A stretch of DNA of 64,000 nt from Ylistrum balloti (lineage: Eukaryota): assembly GCF_031769215.1 (NCBI RefSeq), contig NW_026783096.1, positions 1-64,000 of the forward strand, written 5' to 3'. Position 1 is the stretch's first letter; the number at the start of each line of letters is the position of its first letter. This document shows, in pieces, positions 2,329 to 47,432 of this stretch. Position numbers and translations under genes: made by a program. The notes below the pieces were generated by a model. It was not told the origin of the DNA. It saw only the letters and a list, made by a program, of their open reading frames with translations, and ran no database searches.

Positions 2329-2792
2329 CGGAGTGTCACACTATATAGCTGTAGATACAGTACTATTAATTATCATACTTAGTACTAACACTCGGAATGT
2401 CACACTATATATCTGTAGATACAGTATTATTAATTATCATACTTAGCACTAACACTCAGTGTGTCACACTTCATATCTGTAGAAACAGTACTATCAATTA
2501 TCATACTTAGTATAACACTCGGAGTGTCACAATATATACATTAGATACAGTACTATCAATTATCATACTTAGTAATAACACTCGGAGTGTCACACTATAT
2601 ATCTATGGAAACAGTACTATTAATTATCACACTTAGTACTAACACTCGGAGTGTCACACTGTATATCTATGGAAACAGTACTATTAATTATCACACTTAG
2701 TAATAACACTAGATGGAAACAGTACTATTAATTATCATACTTAGCACTAACACTCGGTGTGTCACAATATATACTATACGTTAGATACAGTA
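2329..2792 (+). repeat. 63-64-bp minisatellite, about 7 units
   Basis: Unit resembles cggagtgtcacactatatatctgtagatacagtactattaattatcatacttagtactaacact; unit starts fall at 2329, 2393, 2457, 2520, 2583 and 2647. Confidence 0.95.
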
Positions 2793-3169
2793 CTGGCAAT
2801 CCAGCGTTTCCAAACAAGTCAATCAACACTAGCGCCATTCTCCTGTACTTTATTTGATGATTTTCCAAGTCCCTTCACCTCCTGATAAGTCACTATCAAT
2901 TGACTCTGAGTGATACCAGTGAACGACACTTTTGTTGATACCTAAACGTGTCTGCCGTTTTCACTCGATGGTTTGCTTATGCTTTTGAGTGCAATAAAAA
3001 AAATCGTGACAGCTATACTTCAAGAAATAATGATACTTTGTTAAAATTCCCGGAAAACAAACAGAAAAGTAATGAATGATCTGTAACAAAATTTCAGTTC
3101 TACAACACCTGCAATCTTACAAAAAAAACAATGATATGTTAATATAATCATAATACAAAATCAAATAAA

Positions 3170-3420
3170 ACTAGGGTAAAATATGAACAAAGAAAATATT
3201 GACACGGAGACCCTTGAAAAATAAGTATAAAAAAAAATTAACTATGTGTTCCCTAAGCGTTTTCTGCTTCATCGGCGACATCTGTCTTGTAAACCTTGGT
3301 AAATCAAAATTATTAATGTCACGTTCTTAATGGAGATCATGATATACGACAACAAAACCAAAAGCCAAATTAACGAGCATCAAACACGTCAAGCTTCATA
3401 TCGCACCAAGAACTAGAATA
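3170..3420 (-). mobile_element. 3' non-coding fragment of a Penelope-like-derived repeat (duplicate at ~47810-48060)
   Basis: The reverse complement 'ccaaggtttaca...gatgaagcagaaaacgct' matches the plus-strand copies at ~31480-31630 and ~35290-35400, which follow Penelope-like RT C-terminal coding remnants. Confidence 0.55.
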
Positions 3421-4417
3421 TTTCTCAATGCGATCACTATGGAAACCAATAATATTTATCAAATTGCATCTAATGAAACTCTGTGTAACGAGTTTGTCCG
3501 TCAATTGAAGACTTCCTGCACGGGAATCATGATTATATGATATTAAGTCAGTGACTCGTCGTACACAGATTTAGTCTTCAGAAGAATGGGCATAGTATTG
3601 ACAAACGGATATACAGCTATTACTAGTAAACTGTAACTAAATATAGCTATAAAGACGATCGGTTATAATTGTTAAATATCATGGCTTGACGTCAGTAAGA
3701 CAATGTCAATGGCATCTAGTTATACATGCAGATATATCTATCATGTCTCATTTTTAGATATGCAGCTATTTGCTATCAACGACTATCGTATACACATTTA
3801 CCCATTTAGGCCTCCAGAATCGGAATAAAGAACACGCCAAATTATACTTCATTAGCCACTAACCTCGATATTTCCCTGCTATGAGATTGCTGGCCAATAA
3901 ACCTTTTCTATTTTTCATTTATTTTAAAAGAAAACCCTGACCTTTTTATTTGCATTTCACACTTATATTTCCGTATTAACGCAACAAATCTAAATTTTAA
4001 ATCTAAACATGCAAAAGATAAAGAAACAAAAAATATACAAAAATACCGATTAGATTTATCTACTATGATACAAACAAGAAGTTTTTAATTTCTAATCACA
4101 ATGTTCTTTTTCTCACGCTTCCTACCCTCTCCGAAAGTTGACGTCATCTATGATTGTCCATGCCTTATATGATTATATTTGAAACTTCTACATTCTCTAA
4201 GTCCATTTCACTAGGTACAACTCTTCCGATGGTTGCATTCCCCGTTTTTTCGAGCAGACTTATAAGTTTTTTACGTCCTCAAGCGCTAATGATGCATTTC
4301 GATAACGCAAAATGTTAAAAGATTACTATAACACAGTCCCAATTTCTTTCTGAAAAAAATTACATCACGAATAAGTGCTGAACGAATGTACGGGTAAACT
4401 GTAGCCAAGTGTCTATT

Positions 4418-5661
4418 TTAAGATGAACTAACATATACAGCATAGACCACGTTAGCAGTCACAAGTAGCACAAAGAACGACACCAGGAATACTCGGTCCA
4501 TCAACACACCAAACTCCCTTTTCGTTACCGTAGTCAAGGTAATTGTTTCTTCATCCTTTAATTCCATCGCTCCGTCGCTCTTAACTGCATCATTGTTACA
4601 TGGAATTGAATTAATATCATCTCCAAATTTGTTCTTTCTTTTCTTGGCTTCAAAATGTTTTCGAGGGTAAGTGATTTTTGAAAGCCACATCGGGATTCGC
4701 TCTTCATTTTCTGCCAAATGGAATCTAAGTCCAATTGTAGTGAAGAAGAGAATAAGTGCACTGTATGTGACATTACAGATAAGGTACTGGGTGAAGATCG
4801 ACACTGGATTTGTGACAGGGAGTTTCTCTGATATCAACGTCATGTACACAGAAAACGAGAGAAACATGGTGACGGAGAAGGACACTCTCTCCCCGGAATG
4901 TGGGGGTAGAAGGAATACTGCTAAGTTAATGAAGCACAGGAGGACAATGGTGTCAGAAGGTTAACAATGATGAACTCCGGTTTTCGTTGAAAGATAACTC
5001 CAAAAGCGATCGTACTCGTTATGTAGGAGGTTTCATTACATGTATAGAAACCATTTACTCTCCACTGTGAGACATCTTCAATAGTAGACAGATTACTTAA
5101 ACTGACCGGAAGCAACACCAGTTCGTTTAAATAATCCGGAGATGTAAGTTTTATAGTACAGTTATGACGATCAAACGGATAGTAACTCATATCGGGTCGA
5201 CAGGATGTGCTTGTCATCACTGTATCAGATATTATATGTTGTCCTGTGTAACCACCACGAACATTGCCTTCCAAAAAAATTGTCTTCGTCTTGGTATTTC
5301 CGGATGGGTTGTTCAGAATAAGGAATGGGTTCCACACTTGACCACTTTCAAACGTCACATAAAATACTTTGGAAGTTGACATGTTCCATCGCATTATTTC
5401 ATTAGTCCATGTCGCAGTAAAAGTGGAAGTGCTCACAAGATCTCCTGATATTTCATGAAAAGCATTAATAGAATGAAAAGTCCATGTAACAGAAACATAA
5501 ATTGGGTAATACTGGTTCCAAACAGGACGGAGATGTTTGCTGTAGTTCTGAAGAAGTTGATTGTGGAATTCTCTAGCAGATTTAAATGTCAGGACAGTGA
5601 ATTCCAAACCAGATGTGATATGGCAAATGATATTCAGAAGAAATAAAGTGTTGATATCCAT
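4418..5661 (-). pseudogene. Intronless nAChR-like Cys-loop subunit, gene A copy 1, with a 1-bp frameshift at the start of M1
   Basis: Signal peptide MDINTLFLLNIICHITSG (first ATG at 5661), Cys-loop C-x13-C (CRPDMSYYPFDRHNC) and M1-M4 split over ORFs 4921-5670 and 4418-4885. The sequence reads aggacaatggtgtc here versus aggacaatcggtgtc in the intact copy, so one C is missing between 4948 and 4949. Confidence 0.9.
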
Positions 5662-6404
5662 ATCCTCCAACCGAATAGAATTCTGCTCAGCAACACGATA
5701 ACGTGTTTGAATGTCATGGGGGTGTTACTTTATAGAATATCTGAATATCTCTGTTATTGCCAGTGGATCATATCTTAATTCATATTGGCCAAAGCTATTA
5801 TGGAGAATGACAACGTGATATAGGTATATCAACAAATAATCGATCGCCCGTATTTTGTACTGTGACTATATACAATAATACGTGAATAATAAAAGCGCAT
5901 TTTGAAGCGAACTGATATATCAATAAAGAGTAGGCTATTTGTTAACATACCAATTAGGATTTATATTTCACTAATGGAGTTTTGTTGAAACTGTCCAGAA
6001 AATTGACTGACCATAGCCATTCTTCCATGTGATCTGATAAAGGTAAACTCTATATACATATAACGGTGATTCTTTAAGTGCTGGACACAATAATGATTGA
6101 TTCATAAACTTCAGTGCGTAACGATTGTGAAGCCATTCCTATCTTAATTCCACTGATGTTGTTGTATTGTTCTGTGTTCTGGGTAGTCCTTACATTCATC
6201 AATCAGAGCGTAGCTCTGGCCATTGCACCCAACGAAGTGGAATTTCCAAATGACAAGAATTTGATAATTAAAAGCAGTGTTTATTCCTTTCAATAAAAAG
6301 TAACCATATTGTCCAACAATTATTGAAAGTAGGTATATACATTTACGTATGTAATGATTTATATTAACTTTGAAAATAGATACTCTGACTGTGCTAATAG
6401 CCAG

Positions 6405-6852
6405 TTATCAAACTGTAAACGTCGTCACGGTTGTCAGCAATGATCAAACTGTAAACGTCGTCACGGTTGTCAACAGTGATCAAACTGTAAACGTCGTCAC
6501 GGTCGTCAGCAGTAATCAAACTGTAAACGTCGTCACGGTTGTCAACAGTGATCAAACTGTAAACGTCGTCACAGTTGTCAGCAGTATCAAACTGTAAACG
6601 TCGTCAAGATCTTCAACAGTGATCAAACTGTAAACGTCGTCACGGTCGTCAACAGTAATCAAACTGTAAACGTCGACACTATCTTAAACAGTGATCAAAT
6701 TGCTAAAGTTGTCACGATCTTCAGCAGTGATCAAACTGTTAAAGTTGTCACGGTAGTCAACAGTTATAAAACTGTAAACGTCGTCACGGTTGTCAGCAGT
6801 AATCAAAATGTTAACGTCGTCACGATCTCCAAAAGTGATCAAACTGTAAACA
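6405..6852 (+). repeat. 36-bp minisatellite, about 12 units (duplicate at ~51026-51473)
   Basis: Unit resembles atcaaactgtaaacgtcgtcacggttgtcagcagtg with period 36 (6411, 6447, ...). One 35-bp unit is present in both copies. Confidence 0.95.
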
Positions 6853-7924
6853 TTTTTTGGTATTTATCCACCCCATTATAGCAATTCAGTAAGTTTTCCA
6901 AATAAGAGATGCTGTGCCATTTACCTCCATTTAATTTCATATTTTCCAGATTGCTACTGAGTTTGACAGTTATCCGGCTCATCTTTTTGCCGGAAATCTT
7001 ACATTACGTTGTTTTTGTTTGGTTTTGTTTTTTTGTTTTTTGTTTTTTTTTTTGTTTGTTTGTTTTTCGTTTTGTTTTTCGTTTTGTTTTTTTTATTCAT
7101 TAAATAAGTTGTTGTTTAAGTGCATGTGAATTTTCAGTCATCACCTCTCAAGCTTAGGACATAAAGACCAAGAATATGTCGCATGTAATAAATTTCAAAA
7201 TACAAAGTTGTTAAGATTTGTTTCTGTCGGATACCGCGATATGATAATCCAGCCAACCTAGAGCCGTCAAATATACTGTATAAGAAGCCACTCGGTAGTT
7301 TAAAATTCACCTGGTTAGCCCTTTGAAAGGACAAAATGAAACCTAAGCCAAAGATTTAAGCTGGTGAGAAAAGATTTATTTAATGTGTATTTTGACGAAA
7401 AAGGCTTGACACATTTACTCAATTGTCATGCAAATATCCCCCCTGATATAGTTAGCATTCTAACAGCAAGTAAGGCCGGGCTGTAAAGCTTCCTAACCAG
7501 GATTATGCAGTCACGATGTTTCAAAAATGACATAGAACAAATTTAGTATATGAACTAGTAGCTAGTTTAATTAGGAACTGTCAATTACAGAGTTGTGTGC
7601 TCCTTATTCCGTCTTTTCGTAATGGAGGTTATCTGCTTGTGTGACCAGGTGTTAATTGTTACTTCATTCATTCATGTTATTTTCTCGCGTAGACTAATAC
7701 AGAAACAACAAATACACACTCCCAAGAGCAGATAACTCTTTATTACGAAAAACTCTTAATGATAGTACTTGAATTAACACTGGAACTTTATTGCATTCTG
7801 TCCGAATGCTATAAGGTCGATGTTAATGCCTCTTTTCTTTACCCATGATACGTAAATATTACTTAAGTTTGCATTTAACTCGACATTATTTAGGTTTTAC
7901 GTTTATCTCCTTGCATGCTGGAAA

Positions 7925-8062
7925 GGTGTGTATCTTCAAGCATAGTAAAAAGGTGTGTATCTCTATGCATGGCATAAAGGTGTGTATCTTCAAGCAAGGT
8001 AGAAATGTGTTTATTCTCAAGCAATGTAGAAATGTATCTATCGTCAAGCAAGGTAGAAATGC
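7925..8062 (+). repeat. 27-bp tandem repeat, about 5 degenerate units (duplicate at ~52543-52680)
   Basis: Unit resembles ggtgtgtatcttcaagcaaggtagaaa. Confidence 0.85.
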
Positions 8063-8736
8063 GGAAAAGTGTGTTGAGAATGAGAAATATCCTGTTTGGA
8101 AACCATAGACAAATTGTAGATATAGTACGTAGAGTATTTACGTAACATAATAAATACCTAATAGTGATCGCTGAGTATGGGCTACTAAGTGAAGTGTAGT
8201 GAAAGCTCTGGTAAAGTTCGAGGTGAAATAGTATAATAGAAATGCCTTATTAAATCATGTGTATGAAACTAACCCAGAACAACAATAAATATTTCAATTT
8301 CTACCCAAATCAGACTCAATGAAACTACTTCAACATTTAATAACCGTAACTTTACGTTTCAAAAAATGTGAAGCGACTGATGCCTGATATTTCTTGTTCT
8401 CCGCTTCGGTGCCTGTAAAACAATGGCCGACATCGCTTCGTTTGCGAGCCGGCGCACCACGTCTAGACGTTATTATTTCGCAAAAAAATGCATACTGTCT
8501 TTGTTGCACAGTATTATCTAAATTTTCATTAAAGTTGTCGAAAAAATATATTAAATAATGTTCTTATTTAAGTTTCATTGAATATGAAGTAACCACGCTG
8601 AAATATATTTCAACCTGTCACAATAATCTGTCTTCAAATGACGGACTATTTGCTTGTATCACGTCAAACGATATGATGACAAGAAACGAAACGAAAGTTT
8701 CCATGCTATAGCAAAAGAGATGCGTGAATTGAAATA

Positions 8737-8895
8737 TAAGGGTTGAATCTTGCTTGTGTCGATTTCATGGGATGATGAATTGAATTGGTCTTGAGATAAA
8801 TTTAATGAACTGCAAAGCAGTTCATGTTGAATTTGTCTCAAGACCAACTCAATTCATCATCCCATTAAATCGACATAAACAAGATTCAATCCTTA
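8737..8895. repeat. Long inverted repeat / hairpin with ~78-bp arms and a 3-nt loop
   Basis: taagggttgaatcttg...atgaactgc-aaa-gcagttcat...caagattcaatcctta; the arms are reverse-complementary with a few mismatches. Confidence 0.9.
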
Positions 8896-9124
8896 AATGA
8901 ACAACAGAATGTTGTGATATCGTGGTAATGTAAGCAGGTAGTGTTTAAGACATTTTTTTTATCAGAAGAAGTGACATATTGGAGATGAATAGCAGTACCA
9001 GGTTAACCGTAGTGAAGTGTCTTGATAAGATGGTGTAATATACACAGCATTGAATGTATTCATCGTATTTGTATTGGATGAACAGCAATACCAGGCTAAC
9101 CGTTGTTAAATGTATTTTGGAAAT

Positions 9125-10060
9125 GATGTGACATAATAAGCACAGCTTACAATTGCAGTCATCAGAAGTACAAGGAAGGACAATAGCAACACTCTGTCCA
9201 TCGGCCCACCTTACTCACTTTGCGTTACCGTAGTTAATGGATCTGTCCTCAACCTTAAAATCAAACCTTAAAATCACCCGATTTCTGCTGTTTCATTGAT
9301 AAACGATTTTTGTGAATTCCACATAGGGATTCGCTCTTCATTCTCTGCCATATGAAATTTCTGTCTAACTATAATAGAGAAGACAATAAATGCATTATAC
9401 ACAACATAACAGATGAGGTCCTGGGTAAAGATTGACACTGGATTTGTGACAGGGAGTTTCTCTAATATCAACGTCATGTATACAGAAAACGAGAGAAACA
9501 ACCTATATTTATAAATATTGACACGCGCTTCCCAGAGCAAGACAATCGGTGTCGAAGGCTCGTTATGATGACCTCATTGAAAGATCATTCTAAAGGCAGG
9601 TTATCACTGTAAAAGGAACAAGCTAGTATTTTCATTAGCAGCACCTCGAACTTTACCGTCCAAAACTCTATCTTCATTGTGGTATTTCTGATTGCGTTGT
9701 TTAGCGTAAGCAATTGATTTCACACTTGTTCAGTCAAACGTCACATAAAAGACTTTGTTAGCGAACACATTGCAGCGCATAAACTGATCAATCTATGTAA
9801 TAGTAAAATATGATGGGGTTGCCATATTTCCATATATGTTCTGAAAGCATTAATGAAAAAAACGTTTCATTCAATAGATACGAAAATTGGGTTAGTTTGA
9901 TATCTATTTGGACGGAGAAGATTGCTATAGTTCTGAAGAAGATGATTATAAAAATTGACATCAGATGATTCAAACGTCAAATTACTGAATTTCCGAAAGT
10001 GTTTGATATGGCAAATGACATTCTAAAGACAAAAAGAATGATGACAAAATACTCAGGTAG
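9125..10060 (-). pseudogene. Decayed nAChR-like paralog of gene A
   Basis: The minus strand retains FYNHLLQNYSNLLRP...IFVSIE* (Trp to stop), FLSFSVYMTLILEKLPVTNPVSIFTQDLIC, FHMAENEERIPMW and an M4 remnant. It has several deletions and frameshifts. Boundaries are approximate. Confidence 0.9.
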
Positions 10061-10329
10061 ATGGAAATGCTGCTTATCATTACGATAATGTGTTTGTCAG
10101 TATTGTTAGTCGGCAAGGAGAGTTCATTATCTGTATGATGAACACAAAATGGTAAAGATCACAAATATAAGTGATTATTCTGCCATTTAGATTAATAAAG
10201 TTGAGGATCCTTGACAACTGTTTTATCACCAATGTATGCACAATAACTTTCAGGTATGACCGCACAACTTTCAAGAAATGTGCGGCAAGGCCGTAAAATT
10301 TGTTACAAGAAGACGTCACGTGACAGCTT

Positions 10330-11317
10330 CAGAGACTGCCCGAGCAATTAGAATACTGTATGCAGGACAATCATAACTGTCTGTAGCTGCACACTTCAAT
10401 GTGGTCACAGTGTCATTTCTTGATCATGAAATCGCTTTCAGATGACCAGAAACGTCACCGATAGAACTCGAATGGAATAGGAAAGCCCTTCAGGATCGTT
10501 ATCTAATTACGTATTATCAGAAATCGGTTTTGCAAGTTCCTAAAGGTTGAATAGCGACTTTTGTCAAGCAACAGGAAGAAGACCTTCTGAAGAAACACTG
10601 AGGAATAGATTTCACCGTTCTGGATTACGTGTTCACAGACCCGTGGTATGACTCACACATACCATAGCTTGGAAGCATTGGGCAGCTGCCTTTGTGAATT
10701 GGCGGCTACGTCAACGACACCTATCATTTTAAAGGATGAGTCCAGATTTCAACATGACAGGAGGCGTGTTTGGCGTGGGTTTGAGTTAGAGGTATGTTGA
10801 CTGATGCGTCACTGAACATGACCGTTTCGGTTGGGGCTTGGTAATGTTTAGAGGGGGTTTTTATTGTCGGACTGACTTGTACGTGACTGGAGGCTCACAG
10901 GTTTACGATACCGGAATGAAGTACTTCATTCAATGGTAAGAGCCTTTGCGCATGGTGTCGGCCCTGAGATTGTGCTGATGGACGACAGTTCTAGACCACA
11001 TAGAGATTCACTTTTGAAAAAGTACCTTCAAGTACCTAGTCTTTCACCCAACCTTAACCTGATCGAGCATGCATGGGGCATGTTAAGCAACCAACTGGAA
11101 CATTTTGAATTTTCAGCGCCATCGAGATTTTATATTTGTTTTAGAAGGATTTGAACATTTTATGTAATCATACGATTCAATGCAATGTATTCAAAGTGGG
11201 GAAAAACCGTTTTCTTTTTGCTTGACTTCATTCTTATATTGCTTATTCCAAAAGATTTTGCCTTTCGATACAAATAAATTAACCTTTAAAAAGAGCCTCC
11301 AAACTTTTTGTGCCCAG
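10330..11317 (+). mobile_element. Tc1-family DNA transposon relic (duplicate at ~54950-55950)
   Basis: Motifs QDRYL, DESRF, MDDSSRPHR and SPNLNLIEHAWGML (DDE remnants, with the D-E spacing shortened by deletion). A terminal-like 'aaactttttgtgcccag' is followed by TA. No left TIR was found. Confidence 0.85.
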
Positions 11318-11618
11318 TACATGGTCAATGGTTCAGATTAAGCGCTGATTGGCACAATTGAAGCAGCTGAGAAAATTCCGTTTATGTTCGTTAATAGACA
11401 GACATACTAATACTGGTAACCTCGTTTATGACATCCGACAATGAACCATCACTGTCTGTGTACAGGAAATACACCAAATAAAGTAGACAATGTCTTTTCA
11501 ACGATCTATTACATCAAATGCATTTTGGTTAAATGTTTACATATAATTTAGGGTTAATATTTCACTAATGGAAATGGGGTTATATTTGAATCCTGTCCGG
11601 AAACAGCACAACAAATAC

Positions 11619-11657
11619 CATTCATTCATACATTCATTCATTCATTCATTCATTCAT
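11619..11657 (+). repeat. (TTCA)n microsatellite (longer in copy 2, ~56252-56303)
   Basis: Direct reading. Confidence 0.9.
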
Positions 11658-12849
11658 AAATCCTTATAGAAGTAAACTATATTGTACATATTATGATTCG
11701 TTAAGTGCTGAACATAATACTGATTGATTTGTGAACCTCAAATGTGTTTCCTGTCTCTGATATGTATAATCAGTGACATTGTAAGTATCGCCATTACACT
11801 AATGTTGTCGCTTTGATATAAATCTATACAGGATGGCGAGTTATTGATTACATCTTATTACTAACATATTGGATATTTCAATATAATTATACATTTCCTT
11901 TTCATCCTAGTCTGTAAAACACCTTCATTACATTGCCAAGGTTATATTCGATATCGCTACCTCTCATTCATATATTTATAGTAAGTAATGCAAAATGGGA
12001 TGTGAAAAAATATTGCCTTATTCGGGGCCACATATATCAGATAAACCATTTACAGATATCCCATCTTGGCGACCTGTGTTTACGAATACATCACGGACTT
12101 TCCCTACTGCATTATCCCATACCTCAACCTTGCTTAAAAGGATTTGAAATGGAACTGTCGATGTTACCTACTTCATGTTTAAGACGTGACTTGTATCGAA
12201 ACGCTATACAACTTTTGCTTACGTACCCTGTGCTTGAGGAACGAAAGTGTTAACACATTGTCATTGTGCTTACTTAACCGTCGTCTAGGATCCATGATTT
12301 CTTCCTTTAAATTTCAGTAAGGATCACACAATCTTCATCTATATTTTACTGTTGAACTTCCTAATATGCTATCAGATAAGATATGCATTAACATACACAT
12401 ATATACTCTGAAACAACACAATGACGTGGTCTACTTGAAAACTTCAGTTTAGAAACACGCAAATTAAGATACTGAAATATAATGAGAATTTGGCCGTTTT
12501 CTGTTACTGAAAGAGTCTGTGAGACACCTGGCGCACAATAGCAAAGAGTGATTCCATGGTCCAATTTTCAAAAAATGCACTGGTTTGAACTTATTTGCCT
12601 AGTTTGGGCTTCAATGTCGTTCTTTTTTAACATCTCAAACAAAACATGAGACACTTTATACTGATTTAGAATGAAATCTAATTTAAACCGTCATATATGG
12701 AATCATTAAATTATCAACACGTGCGTAAATCGTTTGTCCTGACACCAATTAAAGTTTATCGTGCCTCCGCCGAACACACAATGCTATGTTCATAACGAGC
12801 ACATCTTATTAAAAGTTCACTAATTAGAAAGTTTACAAACACACTGCAG

Positions 12850-14625
12850 TCATTTGCGTATGATTTCTACCGGCATTAAACAATCATTAATCCATTTTAC
12901 ATCCGACACCCACCTGTCCATTAGATTACACTGGCTTGTTATATAGTTTTCATGCGCTTCATACTCAGATTGTAGCTTTAAGGATATACGTGAACAAATA
13001 TAACAGTAAACTACGTTAATCAGATCTGACACAAGCCATAAAAAGTCACGAAGCAATGCTCTTAAATGTAAAAGTTGAATTTGCATATAAGGGAATGAAT
13101 GCTTTTAACAGCAGCGCTATTTTACATCAGAAGTCTGTTTTAGCTAACATTTCTCCATACTTTCAGCAGAAATACCCCTGTGATTTCCTACAGTAACCCC
13201 AAACCATTTACATCCAAACTTTTCAACTACAAATGAATGCTGCAAGAACTGAATGTAGATGACCTAAGAAGTACTCCTTTGTCAGCTCGGTCGTATTCTA
13301 CTTCTACTTATAACTATGGTCCTACTAGGCACAAAGTATCTGGTGAATAAAGCTTAATTCAAACTGTTCAGCTACGACAGCTTAAGTATCGCAAAGCCCT
13401 GCCCGTTGATTGGAATAGATTTTCAAGATACTCATGGTTTCCGTTCAAAATATGCCAAAGATTGGGCGAAACGAGATTCACTTTCTGGGTGGGTTAAATC
13501 CATTTTGAAAAGGCTCAGCTGCTTGAAATCTAAAATAGAAACAAAACACTTGTCAGCTTTCCTCGATTCTGATGTTAAACCCATATTTCAAGATTTACAT
13601 GACAAGTACGTTATTGTGACTGTTGTTTAGGGGTCCAATAACTTGATCCTTGTCTGCAAACATTATTTCATTTCCTGCATACAAAAAAGAACAAGGATTG
13701 TTTGATAACGGAGGATATCTCGTCTATACAGTATGCTATTTTTCCAAAGAAAAAATACTTGTTCAGCATACTTTGGTACTAAAATTATTTAGATTACCTA
13801 TTAATGATAAGATGATAAGGATAAGGACCTCTCCCGTATAATTGGATTCCTACATTTCACAAGAATCTATATAAACGACGTTTTAATGCTGGCTCGTCTA
13901 GCTCCTCAACCAAACCTTTGTCAATACTAAGAACTCGACAAGGCTTTTGACCGATCTTCAAAACTCTTTTGTAAAACATACTCTTATACAAAAACATTTG
14001 ATGTTTCCACTCTGCACACCACCATACCAATGCTAAGAAAACTGGAAGAATGCCTTCGTTCTCTTCTTAAGAGCTTTCTTTTTTAGACAGATAACTATAC
14101 TGAAGTGCATTTCCTGCAAAACAATATATCTAAATAGGACGAAATAAGAAAAATGATCTTATTAAAACAAGTCACAAAGGCCATATAAAGTTTTTAAATA
14201 ACTATTTCGGATATATTGGCATAGTTCAGATAACAAGAAATATATTGACGCAATTAATCGTATAAACCCCAACAGAAATAGAATTCAAGGAAAAGAACAG
14301 CTCTACTACATCAGCCGCTTATCTCGTTCTTTTCCGACAATCAAACCAGTATGAACAACTTTCCAATAAGTTGTATAAGTGTGATCATTTTACTTTCCCT
14401 ATTGTGAATTTTCCTTCTCTGGAGTGCAACACACCTTCATCCTCATCCTATCGTGTTAACATATCGCAGTAGATTCGATATTCAAGAGTCTGTTCTAATT
14501 ATCACGTTATCCATCCATGAAATCTTCAATTGCCGGACAAAATCCTAAATCTTTCTTTTGTTCAAATTTTGCCCTAGATCTATTGAATTTGGATTATAAT
14601 TATGTGTTGATATTTTTCCGTTTTC
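12850..14625 (+). mobile_element. Degraded Penelope-like retroelement RT (duplicate at ~57480-59370)
   Basis: Frame-broken motifs LHDKYV..(P.DK)GSNNLILVCKH, WIPTFHKNLYKRRFNAGSSSSSTKPLS, KTFDVSTLHTTIP and FPIVNFP..ISQ*IRYSR match Penelope-like RT as recalled. Boundaries are approximate. Confidence 0.8.
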
Positions 14626-15183
14626 TTTCTTTTGTCTTTTCTGGGTTTTTTTTTTTTATTATTATTATTATTTAACTCAGTGATAAGATTAATTTAACAA
14701 CGACACCCACAAAAAAATCTGTAACTTTAAATGAAATACTGTTTAACAATCATTTTCTGGCTGCCTGGATGTCAGATAAAGTAAAGATAGTATAAAATTT
14801 ACATTGACGACTTCTTTGTTTTTAATCAGACTATGTAAATACAATCCCGTGTCGATACCCATGTTAACACGGGGTAATCGAATCGTTAACTGCTTATTGA
14901 TTTGCTCAAGAATAACAATAACAGTTGATGTCAATAATGGAACGGAATAACCCAACAACATTAACGATATTTCCTTATAGATATAGTTTGTTGAATGGCA
15001 TTATTGATATTTGTTCTGCGTGGTAGAGCTTAAAAGCGCCCTCTTTATCATTTACAAAAAAATTGTCAAAAATCAAATACACTGTATGTGCACATAATCC
15101 GTTATTTTGAAGTTATCCATCGAGTGAGTAATAGAGACGTGTCAGCAATGGTGACAAACAACAACGAACGTAGGCATCACACT

Positions 15184-16485
15184 ATGAATGCGTGGACCTT
15201 TCTGTTCATATTTGCCTGTTTTATGTGCTTTCATGTAAATTGTGACGAGAAAAAGAGTCATGTTGTTGACATCTCCTATGAATCTGTTACCGAGTTACAG
15301 CATTTATTGCTACAAAACTACAGCAAAGATTTTCGCCCCATACATAATCAAGGAAGACAAGTAGTGATATCTGTTTTCTGGGAACTACACAGCATAAATG
15401 CCTTCAATGAGGTCACAGGAGAGTTCGTAACAAGCTCCAGATTTACAACTGCGTGGGTCAATGAAATGATGAAATGGGATCAATCTTTATACAATACATC
15501 TTACATCATTCTTAACAGTGCAAATATATGGATTCCGGTACTTGCTTTCGATAACCCGACTGGAAGTACTGATATCAGGAAGGAATACGAACACGGAACC
15601 ATTCGTTGTACTCCTAAAGGCAACCATTTCTTTGCGGTAGCGATAAGGACGAGCACAATTTGTCAACCTGACATGCGTTTATATCCGTTTGATCGCCATA
15701 ATTGCACCATAATAATTTATACACCTGATTATCTAATTCATGAGATTGCCTTAATACCATTCATTCTGACCGATGTTTCTAAATTAATAGTGGTTTCCCA
15801 ATGGGAGGCTACTAATTTCTACAGCTATAATGACGATACAAGAGATTACAGCCGGCTGGTATTCGGAATTGAGTTCAAAAGAAAACCGGAATTTGTTATC
15901 TTTAATCTACTGGCACCAGTTGTCCTCCTGTGCTTGCTCAATATAACAGTATTCCTTCTACCCCCACAGTCCGGGGAGAGAGTGTCCTTCTCCGTCACCA
16001 TGTTTCTCTCGTTTTCTGTGTACATGACGTTGATATCAGAGAAACTCCCTGTCACAAATCCAGTGTCGATCTTCACCCGGTACCTTATCTGTAATGTCAC
16101 CTACAGTGCACTTATTCTCTTCTTCACTGTAATTGGACTTAGATTCCATTTGGCGGAAGACGAAAATGAGATTCTTTACGGTTGCCTTCAGCGATTAATC
16201 AAAGCCGTATATCTCATTTTTTTCCTTTGTGGAAGACGAAGAAGACAAAAAGAAGATGACCACCAGGTGGCACTCGACAACAAATCTGCTGATACTGTAA
16301 GTACCACCGATTCGCTTCCTCCCGTGTTACCCGAAAATCACAGAGATTTGAATAAAGACAAAAACGTAGGAGATATTCTTATGAAAGACTTCGGCAGACT
16401 GATTGACAAATTTTGTTTAGTGTTCTTTCTAATGATGATTGTAGCAGGGAATTTAACGTTTGTGTTATATATCGCACTATCTTGA
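15184..16485 (+). CDS. Intronless nAChR-like Cys-loop subunit, gene B copy 1 (433 aa from ATG 15184; alternative in-frame ATG at 15148)
   Basis: Intact ORF with signal peptide MNAWTFLFIFACFMCFHVNC, Cys-loop CQPDMRLYPFDRHNC, M2 GERVSFSVTMFLSFSVYMTLISE, and M4 before TGA. No vicinal CC (non-alpha type). Confidence 0.95.
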   Translation: MNAWTFLFIFACFMCFHVNCDEKKSHVVDISYESVTELQHLLLQNYSKDFRPIHNQGRQVVISVFWELHSINAFNEVTGEFVTSSRFTTAWVNEMMKWDQSLYNTSYIILNSANIWIPVLAFDNPTGSTDIRKEYEHGTIRCTPKGNHFFAVAIRTSTICQPDMRLYPFDRHNCTIIIYTPDYLIHEIALIPFILTDVSKLIVVSQWEATNFYSYNDDTRDYSRLVFGIEFKRKPEFVIFNLLAPVVLLCLLNITVFLLPPQSGERVSFSVTMFLSFSVYMTLISEKLPVTNPVSIFTRYLICNVTYSALILFFTVIGLRFHLAEDENEILYGCLQRLIKAVYLIFFLCGRRRRQKEDDHQVALDNKSADTVSTTDSLPPVLPENHRDLNKDKNVGDILMKDFGRLIDKFCLVFFLMMIVAGNLTFVLYIALS

Positions 16486-19400
16486 TACTTGTTAAATGTT
16501 TGTATTGATTTACATACGCTTTAATTTATGTTATATGTATCCTGACTTTATCCTCCTTTCTCTTTACGTCATTAAAGCCCCAATATACGAAAAAATCACT
16601 ATAAAAAAACAAACTTTATCTTATTTTCCCCGTAATATATGTATCAAAACAAATACTTTCCATGAATTAAGAAAATAAAACTGACTGTTTTCAATTTAAC
16701 TATGTGGGACCCACAATAATTCATACATTACCGCTCGTAGCGATGACATTGCACATGCGCATATTCCGCGTGTGTAAACATGGCAGACACAGTACAGACG
16801 TTCACCAGTCGCTTCCTTTTTTTCCAATCATACATCAGGCCAGTTCTGAATTTTTACATTATAATTGTACGTCGTATCGTTTCTAAACTAATTATTCCTT
16901 CTAATAATTTCCCAAAAACTGAATGTTTATCACAGGAATACTTCAAGTCTACGACAAGACTTCGCAAACATGCGTCCTCTACAAGTAGAAACCTCAACTC
17001 TCGCGAGATCAGGTCATGAACTTTCCGACGTGGTTCGGCAACAATCGTAATTTCGATGGAGGCTGTTTAAAATGGAGGTGTGTTTACAAATAGCGAGTTT
17101 CAACTGCTCATATATCAATACTTTATGCACAAAGTCATGGTAACTATTGTTTGAATAACTTAATTCTAACTATATCTTAGAGAATATATCAATAATTATG
17201 TGTGATTCTACATTAAATTTTTGGTGAATGTTACGTATATTGGGGCTTTAAAAATAACATGCCCGTAACTGTGATTGAAAATAAAACTTTATCTGTAAGA
17301 CTCAATATGTAAAGCATGAGTCTCGTTATTGTACTTGACAAATATATCATTATTCGTACAGGTAAATGTATCGAAAGTCACAAGTTTCAACATTTACCTA
17401 TGTGACACTTCAAATTCTCTCTGTATAACATATGATATAATGATGTGTGTAGCATGACTTTATAGACAAAGTGTTGAGGAAAACTTTGTGTACATCCATT
17501 TTCTATATGTCCATAAAAATAGCTTTCCCATTGCTGTGATTGAAATAAAACTGTGTTTGAGATTGACTCAATTTACAGTATACAACATTGTAACGGGAAG
17601 ACTTGTTTTGCTTAATTTAGATAACATATCACTGTCAACTGTTTTTAGTATACATGTATTTATTTACAATGATATAAAATGGTCTTAAGTCACTTAACAC
17701 CAGAATCTCTCACTCTTTCACTCCATTGATAGAACACAATAAAATAATAATAACATTTGTAAAGATGGGATGTGGTCCACACTTTCTATACAACAGTCTA
17801 ACAACAAACACTAATGTCTCCAAATCACAAGTAGGCAGTAATCCACAATGGTGCACACTGACGGTCAAATGTCCACACACCTACTAGCAGGCTGAATTCC
17901 ACTTTCAGTGTACTGAGTCCCTAACTACTATAGCTACTCAAGGTACTCCACAACCTTAACCCTCCCTGGCCGAGGACGAATCCTACGTCAACAGACTCGA
18001 GGACTGGACGATCATACCAAATAACCATCCCCAGTTGGAGGACTGCATGGACCCTGGTATACATCACCGGTCAATAGCATTGGCCACAGGTCCGTAACAC
18101 TACGGAAACGTCAATATGAGACCACATCGGCACCAACAATATCGAGTCAAACTACAATATAATTGACATACACTAATCACAAACGTATGGCCTATTATTC
18201 TCAATACATTGCAGTAAACATCTTACAAGAACATGTCATTACTAGCAACGCTACAGCAACATCCGTTTTGCGTGTAATACTATAAGCCACAATAGATGTA
18301 ACCACTGTATGCAACTCATTATACCTATTCATAATTATTCCAGCTTATAAACAGTAATTACTTGACTACTGTTAGGTTTGTTATAGTGTTAAATATTATG
18401 CAATATCACTACTTGAACATAAAAATGTACAGCCACCACCTTACTAGCTAACAATAACAAACACACACCTGTTAACACGTGTATACACCTGTACAGTACA
18501 GTAGCGACTCTATATAAACAGAACTAGTAATGACATTGTTTACGTCTGTTTACCGCACATAAAATAGTTAAAGTTACTCATGAATTCAACAAAACATGCA
18601 TAAACCTCTAACGGGTAAGGCACTCTACGAAAGCTGCGGTTTTCGTTGATGTTATTCCCGTATTTACGTTTGTTAACCGGCCATGGTTACCACGCACCTG
18701 CTAGTGTTCCCTATTCTCATGTCCTCTCCTCGTTTTCCAGTTCATATCCGGTACAAAATTTTCTACCGTGCGCACGTAATTCAAAGTTCATATGCATGTG
18801 ATATGTGACAATAGTTAGGTCAGTGATAAGTAAGCCTTCAATAAGGAAGAGTAGAATTCAGGTAATGGCGTGAAAGAAAAACCTGAGAAATGACTATAGG
18901 GGGCAACTGCATATTGACCTCTCCTCCCCAAAGTTAACAACAAGGAAACAAATATATATTCACCTGGTGGAGAAGATGTGCAAAAAAAATGTTCGCATTA
19001 TTCAATCGGGTACTTCATTAGATGTCCATTCGACTTCAGACAGACACGTGGTTGTAGTGAACCAATTATGTTTTGAAATATAAATATAAATAGAGAGGCT
19101 TTCGAAAATAACTCAATGAAATATGTAATTGGATACATGTATGTATATGGATGAGGTGGTGGGTGTAAGAATGTGTTCGTGTGTGTGTGGAAGATTGTGA
19201 GTGTGGTGGCGTATGTGTGGTTAGAAATAAAAAATTGTTTTCACATTCTCTTATTTAAGATATTGAAAAAGGTGCACAAACGATGAAGTCTTCTAAACAT
19301 TAGCGCTTTCAGTATAAAGTTTCACATGCTCAACCATTAGGACACATTTACAAAGTACACGGTGGCAAGGATACTATATTTTGACGACACATATACATTC

Positions 19401-34000: not shown

Positions 34001-37000
34001 GATTTGAATGACCTATAAATAAGTCACTTGTTGGTCTTAATGTAAAGTTGTAGTGTAGATATTTCTTACTTTAACGAAATGGTATTCATATCTGATATAA
34101 ATGTCCATCTAAATATATTTGACGGCGAAGATATTTGGTCCCGCACTGTTTACAGACAGATCTAAACATGATCTTGCATACTAAAATCCAACTTATTTGT
34201 AAGATTATTGTTAAAAATGAAACATAATTTATCATAAATGGTCTGTTTTGCCATGTCACACGTCCATGTAACCAAAATCGTAAGAAACATAGTCACGTCT
34301 TGATGACTGTCTCAGCAGATAAAAACTTACTTTAAAGGGAAGTCAATTTGAGAGTTTTTCCATTTGCCAGAAAAACCGTATTCAAAGGGTTCATGTCGTG
34401 TCAAATTATTAAACTCGTTAAATAAATTCCATCTTATATTGACACTCATGTAACCTCTTTCTGTAAATATATGCAATTAAATATCCTATATGAAGATAGT
34501 TTGATTTCACTTAAATGTTTGACAGAAGAGTCAGATATCGTCGCCTTATTTCTCATAGATAAAATTTCCGCTTAAAAAGTATGGGATATGAGACGACTTT
34601 TTTATCAGGTTTAGCAGGATAAGAGTAATGATAATACCTACCCCTGAAATGATACTTAGCACTGTAGCAAACATTCGGATCCCGTGTGACTTGTACCGTA
34701 GTTCTAAATACTGCAATAAAAATGAAAGAAACATTTTCATATTTTTTATTTGTTTTATTGTTTGCAACTGTAATGTCTAACAGCATAACTTACAAACATC
34801 AGATGTATGATAACTGGTGATTAGATTTGTTTTCTTTAAATAACAAGACATTATTGATCATGTTTATCGTATATACATCAGAACTGACATTCAAGGATAC
34901 TACAGACTCTTCAACATCAGCCGCCTACCTCAATTTTCTACTTCAATCTAAACTTCAGATTGTGAGAGGTTTTTTTTTTTTTTTTTTTTTGTATTGCTGT
35001 ACAATATCAGTTATAGTGTTTACATGCCGCAGTTGATTAGATTGCAAGACCTGTTTCCATTTTCACGATTTTCGTGCAAGGAAAAGTAAACTGAAGGACA
35101 ACCCAGTAACACAGGATTTCAAGAGATACAGGTTGATGAAAATTATGGGGAAGCTTTATAGCCGTCATAGTGATCTCATTGAGAAATATTTCATTTCTTT
35201 GTGTGATATGAAGCTGAACGTGTTTGATGTCGTTTATTTGCCTGTTGGTTCCGTTTATGTTCACCTTGTGATATTACTTTCTTGAATGGATCAAGGTTTA
35301 CATGGCGTCCGGAACACCTGGTATTATTCTCCGTGTACTTTTCAGGAGTCTCCGCGTTTATATTTTGCTTTAGTTTTGTTGAAATGAATTTGGATAATGA
35401 TTATGTTGATTTTTTATTTTTTCACTCATACATTAAAAAATGTGCATGTGTTAAATGTTCATCCATTGCTCAATTACTTTATTGATTATAGCTTGAAACT
35501 TTACACAGGTAAGTTGTGTATGCCTCTCCATCATTTACATTGTCAGGCTGAAGTAGTACATTACTTTGTCTATCTTGTCAACGGTTTTTCGGTCATTAGT
35601 CCATCGCAAACACGTTTCTCGCCTAAAGATGTGTAAAAGCATAGTGTAACTACCTGTAATACACAAAACCAGCATAATTTTGGAAAACGTCTTTGATACT
35701 CCATCGCAAGGTTGAATGAAACTGATGAATTCCGCACCTGGCATGACCGAAGCCTTGTGATGTCCATTTGACCAAGAACAATGTAAATGTGCTGCCCTGG
35801 CCTGAAATGTTACCTGTTATGTCGCATATAGAACACGTGTGGGATGAGATGTTGCGTCGCTGACGTCACCTTCAAAATCAGCCGTTGACGTTACCAGACA
35901 TGTCACGTGCGTTTGTGAAAATATTAAATGTTATTTCCAAGCATTTTAAGCACACTTGTCGCATCAGTGTTGTCAAGCATGCAGCGATTCCAATGGTGGA
36001 CACACACGATGAGCTGGACTTTGTTTAGAGAACGTATGTGAAATCTGATCTCTTTCAAAGACGCTGCTGAGGCAATTACCATATAAATTGAGCTGATGTT
36101 AATTAAAAATAAGATAAAACACTGTTGAAATCTTTTTGGTGATTTCTTTTTTTCCGCTGGTATAAATATATAATCATGAATATATTTTCTATCTATGTGC
36201 CCTATTAAGTCCGTTTCATCCACTATGAAATAAGCATTGGTGTTCGTTATCGACACACACTCTTTTTAATGTCGTCGATGATTATGTATCCTAGTTTCTC
36301 GCATATTCAACTTATCAAAGCGTCTATCAGAAAGGAAATATCCCTCAGTTTGAATTGTAGGTACCACAGGGCGAAAACTCCTCAGACATTATGATTTCTT
36401 TGTTTATCTGGTTTTCGCTTTTATATTTTTACTGATTGTCTCTTGGATAAAAAGTGATAAAACACTTTTCGCATCAACATGGTAGTTATTACATAACAAG
36501 TACTTCGGTTGGACCTAAATTTACAAGGTGTGTAAAAAGTCTTTTTTATTGTCTGGTATTAACCTCTATGCACTGTTTTACGATTTGTTCTTTAGTCGTT
36601 GCAACAGTTCTAACTACATCGGTTGTCATTGTTATTTCTCAACTATGTGTGATAAATCTTCAAAATACTTAGAAAAGAAAAACGTGAAAAAAGGAAAAAC
36701 AAATGATCATACTAATCTCATACAGTAAAGCCCCGCTAAGTCGAACTCCTCGGGCCTGTGTCAATAGTTCGAGGAATACAGGGTATTCGAGTAATCAGAG
36801 GTTGGTCAAAATGCTTGTTATCACTAATATCACAGAGAGTAACGGCGTGTCGGCTTCAGTGACTATTTTTCTATACGTACTGTTTGTTTAGATAGGCCTA
36901 ATTACGGACACAAAGATATGTGAATCTAATCATAGAAAAATGCAAAAACAAACTCGTTGTTTAAAAGGCAGCTAAGGCATTAGCTTAATTTATGTATCGG

Positions 37001-47069: not shown

Positions 47070-47432
47070 TAACACTCGGAATGTTGCGTCATATATATGT
47101 AGATACAGTACTATTAATTATCATACTTAGTACTAACACTCGGAATGTGACACTACATATCTGTAGAAACAGTAATATTAATTATCATACTAAGTACTAA
47201 CACTCGGAGTATCACACTACATATTTATAGATACAGTACTATTAATTATCATACTTAGAACTAACACTCAGTGTGTCACACTATATACGTTAGATACAGT
47301 ACTATTAATTGTCATACATAGTACTAACACTCGGAGTGTCACACTACATATCTGTAGATACAGTACTATTAATTATCATACTTAGAACTAACACTCAGTG
47401 TGTCACACTCTATACGTTAGATACAGTACTGG
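47070..47432 (+). repeat. 64-bp minisatellite, copy 2 (about 5-6 units)
   Basis: Same unit as 2329-2792. Confidence 0.92.

What the first reader, a model, noticed from the sequence alone, without database searches (positions are those of the whole stretch)
4713..16154. Shared pore cassette: a 208-nt M1-end to M3 tract nearly identical between otherwise ~40%-identical paralogs
Seen in sequence: the reverse complement of 4713-4920 (gene A) matches 15947-16154 (gene B) with only 5 mismatches in 208 nt, including a 109-nt perfect run (4789-4897 equals 15970-16078). Synonymous positions are identical too. The ectodomains are about 40% identical in protein and the M3-M4 loops are unalignable. The decayed paralog also matches at 76 of 80 nt over 9421-9500, while its flanks are much more diverged. 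Purifying selection on protein cannot keep silent sites identical or act on a pseudogene. Inference: recurrent interlocus gene conversion homogenises the pore-lining M2 and M2-M3 gating linker. All subunits would then keep one compatible pore or assembly module while ligand-binding domains diverge, giving a constant-region / variable-region architecture.
Basis: partly seen in the sequence, partly recalled or inferred. Interest (0 to 1): 0.85.

Follow-up and report, generated by a model that had tools for sequence, protein, structure and literature searches.

The report
Gene conversion homogenises scallop channel pore
In a scallop, clustered acetylcholine-receptor-like channel genes that are otherwise very different keep swapping a roughly 210-250-base piece encoding the pore, a clear new example of the known process of gene conversion limited to one part of a gene.

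Summary
The reverse complement of 4713-4920 matches 15947-16154 at 203 of 208 bases, with a 109-base perfect run, and the pseudogene island 9421-9500 matches at 76 of 80. The window is Ylistrum balloti contig JAUZWB010001011.1. It holds intronless Cys-loop channel genes A, P (decayed) and B, each present twice because about 17 kb is duplicated.

Silent-site divergence between A and B is saturated in the ectodomain (pS 0.77) but is 0.04 in the tract. Between scallop genera the tract's silent sites are free (dS 0.95-1.4), so there is no nucleotide-level constraint.

Ectodomain and loop+M4 trees group genes by orthology; the tract tree groups them by species in Ylistrum, Pecten and Argopecten, and AU tests reject the opposite groupings. 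Among seven Ylistrum copies the tract has no fixed A/B difference, several shared variants and three four-gamete pairs, against 217 fixed differences in the ectodomain. Contigs from four independent read samples show the shared run as a separate unitig at about twice the flank depth, so it is not a polishing artefact.

Recurrent interlocus gene conversion is supported. The adaptive "constant pore / variable ectodomain" reading is not shown: tract edges differ between genera, pseudogenes take part, and M2 protein is kept nearly unchanged (one substitution) by purifying selection alone. This is a new member of a known kind.

The parts
4418..5670 (-). Gene A, copy 1 (A1): intronless Cys-loop channel gene. 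In this assembly it is split by a 1-nt deletion between 4947 and 4948, in M1.
   Evidence: ORFs; alignment with A2; Pfam domains on the intact twin; the deletion is absent from four read samples.
4713..4920 (-). Core converted tract in A1 (end of M1, M2 at 4823-4891, M2-M3 linker, M3). Extended similarity covers 4703-4947.
   Evidence: A separate 109-nt unitig at 4789-4897 has about twice the flank depth in runs X1 and X4, with a 117-nt equivalent (4789-4905) in X2.
9124..10022 (-). Pseudogene P1: a decayed A-like copy that lacks about 245 nt around M1.
   Evidence: tblastn and blastn; read contigs joining 4866 to 5348.
9421..9500 (-). M2 island of P1, 76/80 identical to A and B. Third codon positions match at 24/27, against 57-74% elsewhere in P1.
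15184..16485 (+). Gene B, copy 1 (B1): intact intronless Cys-loop channel gene of 433 aa, head-to-head with A1.
15947..16154 (+). Core converted tract in B1 (M2 at 15976-16044, linker at 16045-16068, M3 at 16069-16146). Extended similarity covers 15920-16164.
49038..50291 (-). Gene A, copy 2 (A2): intact, 417 aa.
49333..49540 (-). Core converted tract in A2.
53794..54668 (-). Pseudogene P2, the duplicate of P1. Its M2 island is at 54148-54227.
59950..61251 (+). Gene B, copy 2 (B2): intact, 433 aa.
60713..60920 (+). Core converted tract in B2.
2363..19234 (.). First copy of the roughly 17-kb direct duplication that carries A, P and B. The second copy is at 47041-64000 and runs to the window end.
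   Evidence: blastn self-comparison (94-98% identity); comparison with two other contigs of the same assembly.

Best explanation
The tract is a product of recurrent, still ongoing non-allelic (ectopic) gene conversion among clustered, intronless Cys-loop channel paralogs (A, B, B4, the pseudogene P and a decayed fragment) of the scallop Ylistrum balloti. Between the distant paralogs A and B, conversion is confined to the end of M1 through M3.

Shown here:
- The A/B duplication predates the split of Ylistrum, Pecten and Argopecten.
- The ectodomain and the loop+M4 have diverged to saturation, whereas the tract has been overwritten within each lineage after the genera split.
- The paralogs now share their variants and have no fixed difference in the tract.

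Inferred:
- The restriction to M1-M3 is mainly a by-product. Strong purifying selection on the pore helices slows divergence there, so this is the only segment where A and B stayed similar enough for heteroduplex formation.
- Each conversion resets identity and keeps the segment convertible.
- The ectodomain and the loop diverged fast enough to escape, or conversions there are removed by selection.
- The consequence, whether or not it is selected for, is that all copies in the cluster carry one species-specific pore/M3 sequence and that amino-acid changes in M3 spread to all paralogs.
For: - **Silent sites.** For A2 versus B1, pS is 0.77 (saturated) in the ectodomain but dS is 0.042 in the 67-codon core. 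The same core has dS 0.95-1.4 and dN 0.06-0.10 between genera.
- **Identity matrices.** The tract is 97-98% identical (Ylistrum A/B), 93-96% (the two Argopecten sublineages) and 85-86% (Pecten A/B). The matching ectodomain values are 56%, 61-63% and 56-57%. Between genera the tract is 74-81% identical.
- **Trees.** The ectodomain tree supports the A and B clades at 100/100. The tract tree supports Ylistrum at 100/99, Pecten at 94/94 and Argopecten at 100/99.
- **AU tests.** Ectodomain data reject a Ylistrum clade (p 1e-66) and a Pecten clade (p 5e-79). Loop+M4 data reject a Ylistrum clade (p 7e-4). Tract data reject the B orthology clade (p 1e-4).
- **Variation among seven Ylistrum copies.** The ectodomain has 217 fixed differences and 0 shared polymorphisms. 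The core has 0 fixed differences, shared variants at five or more sites and three four-gamete pairs.
- **Perfect runs.** They reach 35-109 nt within a genus and at most 23 nt between genera.
- **Independent reads.** Four samples show the shared run as a separate unitig at about twice the flank depth: 109 nt in X1 and X4, 117 nt in X2, and a matching depth peak in X3.
- **By-product reading.** Tract edges differ between genera. Pseudogenes and a rearranged fragment carry the tract. B3 is a B1/B4 mosaic outside the tract. GC3 is raised in the tract in all three genera, 0.49-0.56 against 0.34-0.47.
Against: - No conversion event was observed directly. Everything is inferred from sequence patterns.
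- Some of the seven Ylistrum 'copies' may be alleles of the same loci, so copy number is unsettled. The assembly is fragmented at this locus.
- In Argopecten all copies form one clade in the ectodomain tree too (91/97). Conversion there rests on branch-length contrast, not on topology.
- Raised GC3 could reflect codon use in membrane helices rather than GC-biased conversion.
- The by-product-versus-selected question is argued, not tested.
- The residual A2/B1 differences in the core are mostly non-synonymous (4 of 6). That could hint at selection on those sites, although the numbers are small and the sites are polymorphic.
Confidence: 0.85

Rival explanations
1. Selected constant module. Conversion of M2-M3 is favoured by selection because the subunits must co-assemble around one compatible pore and gating linker while their ligand-binding domains diversify. 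This is a constant-region/variable-region design, as proposed for protocadherin clusters.
For: - M2 is included, at least in part, in the homogenised segment in all three genera.
- Species-specific amino-acid states in M3 are shared by paralogs within each genus.
- The ectodomain is highly divergent, with dN about 0.47 between A and B.
- Domain-restricted homogenisation attributed to selection is documented for protocadherins (PMC3966226).
Against: - The M2 peptide is nearly identical in all three genera at dS of about 1, so purifying selection alone maintains it.
- Tract edges differ: Pecten covers pre-M1 to the first part of M2, and Ylistrum covers the end of M1 to M3.
- Pseudogenes and a rearranged fragment are homogenised too.
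- Closer paralogs exchange any region of the gene.
- No evidence of co-expression or co-assembly exists, and no RNA runs were found.
Confidence: 0.15
2. A single historical event in each lineage, either one conversion or one chimeric gene formation, followed by ordinary divergence. There would be no recurrent or ongoing exchange.
Against: - There are no fixed differences, variants are shared between A and B copies, and there are three four-gamete pairs within 208 nt.
- Tracts have different age and extent: the P island is 95% identical and retains a silent state (the serine codon before ATC-TTC) shared with Pecten and Argopecten, where Ylistrum A and B both carry a different base, while A/B is 98% identical.
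- Independent species-specific tracts occur in three genera.
Confidence: 0.04
3. A nucleotide-level functional element (RNA structure, regulatory or editing-related sequence) embedded in the coding region is conserved by selection on the DNA or RNA itself.
For: Silent sites are identical between A and B. A and B are inverted relative to each other, so the tracts form a 245-nt inverted repeat.
Against: Between genera the same tract has pS 0.54-0.64 (dS about 1.0-1.4) while the protein is conserved, and nucleotide identity is only 74-81%. An element under nucleotide-level selection would be conserved across genera.
Confidence: 0.01
4. An assembly or polishing artefact: reads cross-mapped between paralogs made the consensus identical.
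For: The assembly is fragmented and redundant at this locus, and carries at least one probable indel error, the A1 frameshift.
Against: - De Bruijn contigs of four independent samples from two studies show the shared run as its own unitig at about twice the flank depth, with B-type and A-type continuations at its ends.
- The same tract occurs on three contigs of this assembly.
- The same phenomenon occurs in independent assemblies of Pecten maximus and Argopecten irradians.
Confidence: 0.01

Closest known systems
Domain-restricted concerted evolution in vertebrate protocadherin clusters (Noonan et al. 2004, as summarised in PMC3966226)
   Same: Tandemly clustered receptor paralogs in which one segment is homogenised by gene conversion within each lineage while the recognition domains stay diverse. 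Trees of the homogenised part have very short within-species branches.
   Different: There the homogenised part is one ectodomain of large variable exons that share spliced constant exons. Here it is the membrane pore segment (M1-M3) of complete, separate intronless genes, some in inverted orientation, and pseudogenes take part. Selection against conversion elsewhere is the proposed cause in protocadherins; here a homology-limited by-product is at least as likely.
RHCE/RHD and other young duplicates with shared polymorphism through conversion (Innan 2003, cited in PMC3966226). The theory of escape from conversion (Walsh 1987; Teshima and Innan 2004) is cited from my own knowledge.
   Same: Shared polymorphism and lack of fixed differences between paralogs in the converted part. 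Regions under divergent selection escape conversion.
   Different: Those are recent duplicates that are similar along most of their length. Here the paralogs are old (they predate three genera, with silent sites saturated) and only about 210-250 nt remain in concerted evolution.
Expanded intronless, tandemly arrayed nAChR-like genes of bivalves (Jiao et al. 2019, PMC6896357)
   Same: The same kind of genes: intronless, clustered, lineage-specific nAChR-like subunits with many decayed copies.
   Different: That paper attributes diversity to retroposition and stepwise tandem duplication. Its text contains neither 'gene conversion' nor 'concerted'.
Cephalopod chemotactile receptors (CRT1/CRB1; PDB 8eis, 8eiz, 9e6b)
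   Same: Lineage-specific nAChR-derived pentameric channels with diversified ligand-binding domains. They are among the best solved-structure matches of gene B.
   Different: They are only distant relatives at about the same score as 5-HT3A and Torpedo nAChR. No report of pore-restricted conversion was found for them in the searched library. The function of the scallop genes is unknown.

Membership tests
Pentameric ligand-gated (Cys-loop) ion channel subunit, nAChR-like | Ligand-binding domain plus transmembrane-region domain | tested here: met
   PF02931 and PF02932 score above the curated cut-offs in A2 and B1. The best solved matches are Torpedo nAChR beta, 5-HT3A and nAChR alpha7.
Pentameric ligand-gated (Cys-loop) ion channel subunit, nAChR-like | Cys-loop: two cysteines separated by 13 residues, containing the YPFD motif | tested here: met
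   Present at B1 aa 160-174 and A2 aa 157-171, read from the translations.
Pentameric ligand-gated (Cys-loop) ion channel subunit, nAChR-like | M1-M4 helices with a cation-type M2 (Glu at -1', Leu at 9', Glu at 20') | tested here: met
   M1-M3 align with the Torpedo beta chain. The M2 string begins with GER and ends with SEK, with Leu at the ninth position counted from Arg 0'. The prime numbering is read from the sequence and from my own knowledge of nAChR numbering. M4 is inferred from the C-terminal hydrophobic segment.
Pentameric ligand-gated (Cys-loop) ion channel subunit, nAChR-like | Acetylcholine-binding residues and ligand-gated current | not tested
Channel function needs expression and electrophysiology.
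Interlocus (non-allelic) gene conversion / concerted evolution | A bounded tract with near-zero silent divergence inside paralogs whose flanks are saturated | tested here: met
   dS is 0.042 in the core against pS 0.77 in the ectodomain. Run-length permutation gives p <= 1e-4.
Interlocus (non-allelic) gene conversion / concerted evolution | Phylogenetic incongruence: the tract groups by species and the flanks by orthology | tested here: met
   Trees. AU tests (p 1e-66, 5e-79 and 7e-4 for the flanks; p 1e-4 for the tract).
Interlocus (non-allelic) gene conversion / concerted evolution | Silent sites of the tract evolve freely between species, so there is no nucleotide-level constraint | tested here: met
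   dS is 0.95-1.4 between genera in the same 67 codons.
Interlocus (non-allelic) gene conversion / concerted evolution | Shared polymorphism and no fixed differences between paralogs (ongoing exchange) | tested here: met
   The core has 0 fixed differences, shared variants and three four-gamete pairs, against 217 fixed differences in the ectodomain. Caveat: some copies may be alleles.
Interlocus (non-allelic) gene conversion / concerted evolution | GC-biased footprint | tested here: inconclusive
   GC3 is 0.49-0.56 in the tract against 0.34-0.47 in the flanks in three genera. Codon use in membrane helices is a confound.
Selected constant-region / variable-region architecture | The same structural module is homogenised in every lineage | tested here: inconclusive
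   All tracts touch M2 but their edges differ: Ylistrum about aa 250-315, Pecten about aa 228-270 plus about 303, Argopecten about aa 223-310.
Selected constant-region / variable-region architecture | Homogenisation depends on function, so it is absent from pseudogenes | tested here: not met
   The frameshifted Argopecten copies, Pecten Pm_A, Ylistrum P and a rearranged fragment all carry the species-specific tract or part of it.
Selected constant-region / variable-region architecture | Subunits are co-expressed and co-assemble | not testable with these tools
   No RNA run holds the gene. Assembly needs experiments.

The most novel reading that the evidence does not exclude
The homogenised M1-M3 segment is a selected 'constant' pore and assembly module. 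Conversion would be maintained because it lets any combination of divergent ectodomains (A, B, B4) co-assemble into working heteropentamers and lets pore and M3 substitutions co-evolve in all subunits at once. That would be a combinatorial receptor design in a bivalve, possibly chemosensory.
Probability: 0.15. Interest if true: 0.75.

Novelty: new member of a known kind. Interest (0 to 1): 0.5.

Why it matters
This is a clean, multi-lineage case in which a short segment of old paralogs has stayed in concerted evolution long after the rest of the genes diverged to saturation.

- **Phylogenetics of bivalve nAChR-like families.** Trees built on the conserved transmembrane part will wrongly suggest species-specific expansions. 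Conversion, alongside retroposition and tandem duplication, shapes these families.
- **Channel biology.** All subunits of the cluster carry one species-specific pore/M3 sequence. This gives a testable hypothesis of co-assembly and offers natural chimeras for studying how the ectodomain couples to the pore.
- **Molecular evolution.** It offers a system to measure how local similarity limits ectopic conversion.

Tried and rejected
- The oyster pair P0007/P0008 (Saccostrea) was tested as a possible further case. The two are 92% identical along their whole length, so they are simply recent duplicates and uninformative.
- Six literature searches found no report of pore-restricted conversion in pentameric channels, bivalve nAChRs or cephalopod chemotactile receptors. 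This covers the held library only.
- A search of earlier scan notes for gene conversion in this genome found nothing.
- No RNA run holds the gene, so expression could not be assessed.
- Copy number (true tandem duplication versus retained haplotigs) could not be settled from contig depths, because there is no single-copy baseline. Comparison of contigs favours a real duplication.
- The loose end at 4713 in the reads could only be partly placed. It resembles the decayed fragment on contig 806 but is not identical to anything fetched.
- A nucleotide-level element and an assembly artefact were considered and rejected (see the rival explanations).
- A second and third large protein search and the representative search were not run. 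The first search already showed that this subfamily is confined to a few scallop genera among annotated proteins.
Full report
**1. The observation**

The reverse complement of 4713-4920 aligns without gaps to 15947-16154 with 203 of 208 identical bases. The mismatches leave a 109-nt perfect run, 4789-4897 = 15970-16078. At lower identity the similarity extends to 245 nt (4703-4947 / 15920-16164, 94%). The decayed copy matches A and B at 76 of 80 positions over 9421-9500.

Three points were missed:
- The window holds a direct duplication of about 17 kb (2363-19234 = 47041-64000, 94-98% identity). Every element is therefore present twice: A1/A2, P1/P2 and B1/B2.
- The abrupt 5' edge of the pseudogene island at 9500 is a deletion junction of the pseudogene relative to gene A. 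Read contigs of the pseudogene, laid on A, jump from 4866 to 5348.
- The five A/B mismatches are not fixed differences (section 5).

**2. What the genes are**

The window is contig JAUZWB010001011.1 of the Ylistrum balloti (saucer scallop) assembly GCA_031769215.1.

A (417 aa) and B (433 aa) are uninterrupted ORFs. Their features:
- Both Pfam domains of Cys-loop channels score above the curated cut-offs.
- Both have a C-x13-C Cys-loop containing YPFD, and M1-M4 segments.
- M2 is of the cation-channel type. It aligns with the Torpedo nAChR beta chain and has Glu before and after the helix and Leu at 9' (the numbering is from my own knowledge).

A and B are head-to-head, with A on the minus strand, B on the plus strand and the A-like pseudogene P between them. 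A and B are 43% identical in the ectodomain, 20% in the M3-M4 loop and 96% in the core tract.

Among annotated proteins, close relatives exist only in a few scallops: Pecten maximus at 58% to B, and Argopecten irradians at 45%. All other hits are at or below 34% identity. This is a small scallop-specific subfamily, not "all subunits".

**3. Silent sites**

Sliding windows along a codon alignment of A2 and B1 give pS of 0.6-1.0 everywhere outside the tract and about 0 inside it. The high values outside include conserved motifs such as the Cys-loop.

By Nei-Gojobori counting:
- Ectodomain, A2 against B1: pS 0.77 (saturated), dN 0.47.
- 67-codon core, A2 against B1: dS 0.042, dN 0.027.
- Same 67 codons between genera: dS 0.95-1.4, dN 0.06-0.10.

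So the protein is under strong purifying selection, but its silent sites turn over normally between genera. This excludes a nucleotide-level conserved element, a low local mutation rate, and protein-level selection as causes of the within-species identity.

**4. Comparison across genera**

I fetched the genomic loci of the relatives and found further, mostly frameshifted, copies by tblastn.
- **Pecten maximus:** two B-like genes, an apparently frameshifted A-like copy head-to-head with one of them, and a fragment.
- **Argopecten irradians:** an array of at least seven copies in alternating orientation, falling into two sublineages.

Region-wise nucleotide identities:

| Comparison | Ectodomain | M1-M3 tract |
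|---|---|---|
| Ylistrum B vs Pecten B (orthologs) | 68% | 77-79% |
| Ylistrum A vs Pecten A (orthologs) | 63-64% | 77-80% |
| Ylistrum A vs B | 56% | 97-98% (core) |
| Argopecten sublineages | 61-63% | 93-96% |
| Pecten A vs B | 56-57% | 85-86% |
| Any pair between genera | n/a | 74-81% |

The loop+M4 region behaves like the ectodomain.

Maximum-likelihood trees agree with this. The ectodomain tree has A and B clades at 100/100 support. The tract tree has species clades: Ylistrum 100/99, Pecten 94/94, Argopecten 100/99.

AU tests:
- Ectodomain data reject a Ylistrum clade (p 1e-66) and a Pecten clade (p 5e-79).
- Loop+M4 data reject a Ylistrum clade (p 7e-4).
- Tract data reject the B orthology clade (p 1e-4).

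Perfect runs reach 35-109 nt between distant paralogs within a genus, but at most 23 nt (median 16) between genera. Permutation gives p <= 1e-4 for the within-genus pairs.

In Argopecten all copies also form one clade in the ectodomain tree. Conversion there rests on the contrast in branch lengths: about 0.6 substitutions per site in the ectodomain against about 0.04-0.07 in the tract.

**5. Recurrent and ongoing, not a single event**

The same assembly holds two more contigs with this locus:
- JAUZWB010001333.1 carries A3.
- JAUZWB010000806.1 carries A4, a P copy, B3, a distinct intact paralog B4 (86% identical to B1 in protein) and a rearranged fragment.

Comparing A1-A3 with B1-B4:
- The ectodomain has 217 fixed differences and no shared polymorphism.
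- The 208-nt core has no fixed difference.
- Core sites 825 and 918 are polymorphic in both groups.
- At sites 884, 906, 934 and 935, some B copies carry the A state.
- At site 774, one A copy carries the B state.
- Three site pairs show all four combinations.

Whether these seven sequences are all separate loci or partly alleles, the pattern needs repeated exchange.

Tracts also differ in age and extent:
- The P island is 95% identical. At one silent site it keeps the state seen in Pecten and Argopecten, where Ylistrum A and B share a different, presumably derived, base.
- Its third codon positions match at 24/27, against 57-74% in the rest of P.
- Tract edges differ between genera: Ylistrum about aa 250-315, Pecten about aa 228-270 plus a second peak near aa 303, Argopecten about aa 223-310.

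**6. Not an artefact**

Logan contigs of four DNA samples from two studies were laid on 4200-6250.
- The 109-nt run 4789-4897 appears as its own unitig in X1 and X4, with a 117-nt equivalent (4789-4905) in X2. X3 shows the same depth peak.
- Unitig depth is about twice that of the A-specific flanks: 79.5 against 33-39 in X1, 48.9 against about 22 in X2, and 94.2 against about 35 in X4.
- This is what a de Bruijn graph gives when two loci share exactly that stretch in the raw reads.
- At the 3' edge (4709-4713) the contigs branch into non-A continuations. One is identical to B4 of contig 806. The other is related to the decayed fragment.

Together with three contigs of this assembly and two independent assemblies of other genera, this rules out polishing cross-talk.

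**7. Why only M1-M3**

This part is inference. I favour a homology-limited by-product.
- Purifying selection keeps the pore helices the slowest-diverging part. Their baseline between genera is 74-81% nucleotide identity, against 42-56% for A versus B elsewhere.
- That segment therefore stays similar enough for heteroduplex formation, and every conversion restores identity. The ectodomain and the loop escaped.

Support for this reading:
- The M2 peptide is nearly invariant in all three genera (one S-to-T change in Argopecten P0006), so conversion is not needed to keep the pore uniform.
- Tract edges are not tied to one structural module.
- Frameshifted copies and a rearranged fragment are homogenised as well.
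- Where paralogs are more similar, exchange is not confined to the pore. B3 equals B1 over aa 87-235 and equals B4 from about aa 316 to the stop. The Argopecten pseudogene sublineage is 97-100% identical in loop+M4 but 83-86% in the ectodomain.
- Raised GC3 in the tract (0.49-0.56 against 0.34-0.47) in all three genera fits long-term GC-biased conversion, but is confounded by codon use in membrane helices.

The selected-module reading remains possible, at about 0.15. Species-specific M3 residues are shared by paralogs, and selection against conversion in the ectodomain may contribute. No expression or assembly data exist.

**8. Relation to what is known**

Region-restricted concerted evolution is well documented. 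Examples are one ectodomain of the protocadherin variable exons, and RHCE/RHD (PMC3966226). The main description of bivalve nAChR expansions reports intronless tandem arrays but mentions neither gene conversion nor concerted evolution (PMC6896357). Searches of the held library found no report for pentameric channels or cephalopod chemotactile receptors.

I therefore class this as a new member of a known kind. It is a well-supported case in a family where it has practical consequences: trees built on the transmembrane region will mimic species-specific expansion.

**9. Verdict**

- Recurrent interlocus gene conversion is supported (0.85).
- The adaptive constant/variable architecture is unproven (0.15).
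- Interest is moderate (0.5).

Noticed in passing
window 4947-4948 (gene A1, M1): The 1-nt deletion that splits A1 into two ORFs is absent from A2, from A3 on L005 and from the A4 protein P0023. Every contig of four independent read samples carries one extra base there. It is probably an assembly indel or a private allele, which weakens any reading of A1 as an ectodomain-only gene.
   Followed up: partly
window 2363-19234 and 47041-64000: A direct duplication of about 17 kb at 94-98% identity carries A, P and B. Contig 806 matches copy 2 at 98.1% over 11.4 kb, and contig 1333 matches copy 1 at 98.2%. This suggests a real tandem duplication with both haplotypes partly assembled, but copy number is not settled.
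   Followed up: partly
window 36992-38649: Two adjacent ORFs have weak RNase H (PF17917) and tyrosine recombinase (PF00589) matches. This looks like a DIRS-like retroelement in the spacer between the two copies of the locus.
   Followed up: no
window 42155-42544; L005 10017-12914: An exon of a sodium:solute symporter (PF00474) gene lies downstream of gene A. The same neighbour follows A3 on contig JAUZWB010001333.1.
   Followed up: no
L007 10037-14820 (contig JAUZWB010000806.1): The other version of the locus has B3 followed 2.2 kb later by a distinct intact paralog, B4, which the window lacks. B3 is a mosaic: identical to B1 over aa 87-235 and identical to B4 from about aa 316 to the stop.
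   Followed up: partly
L007 17720-18110: A rearranged, decayed B-like fragment keeps about 95 nt of the tract, perfect apart from a 1-nt deletion. Reads of four samples hold a related form with the whole tract (the loose end at window 4713) that matches nothing fetched exactly.
   Followed up: partly
L002 1777-3040 and 10001-11296; L001 6137-6510 and 10001-11278; L003/L004: The head-to-head (minus/plus) pairing of family members recurs in Pecten (A-like pseudogene with B2, fragment with B1) and in Argopecten (three successive minus/plus pairs about 13 kb apart). Most copies outside Ylistrum are frameshifted.
   Followed up: partly
window 6299-6923, 7874-8088, 2264-2764 and their duplicates: There are tandem repeats with periods of 36, 27 and 64 nt in the intergenic DNA between A and P and downstream of A.
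   Followed up: no
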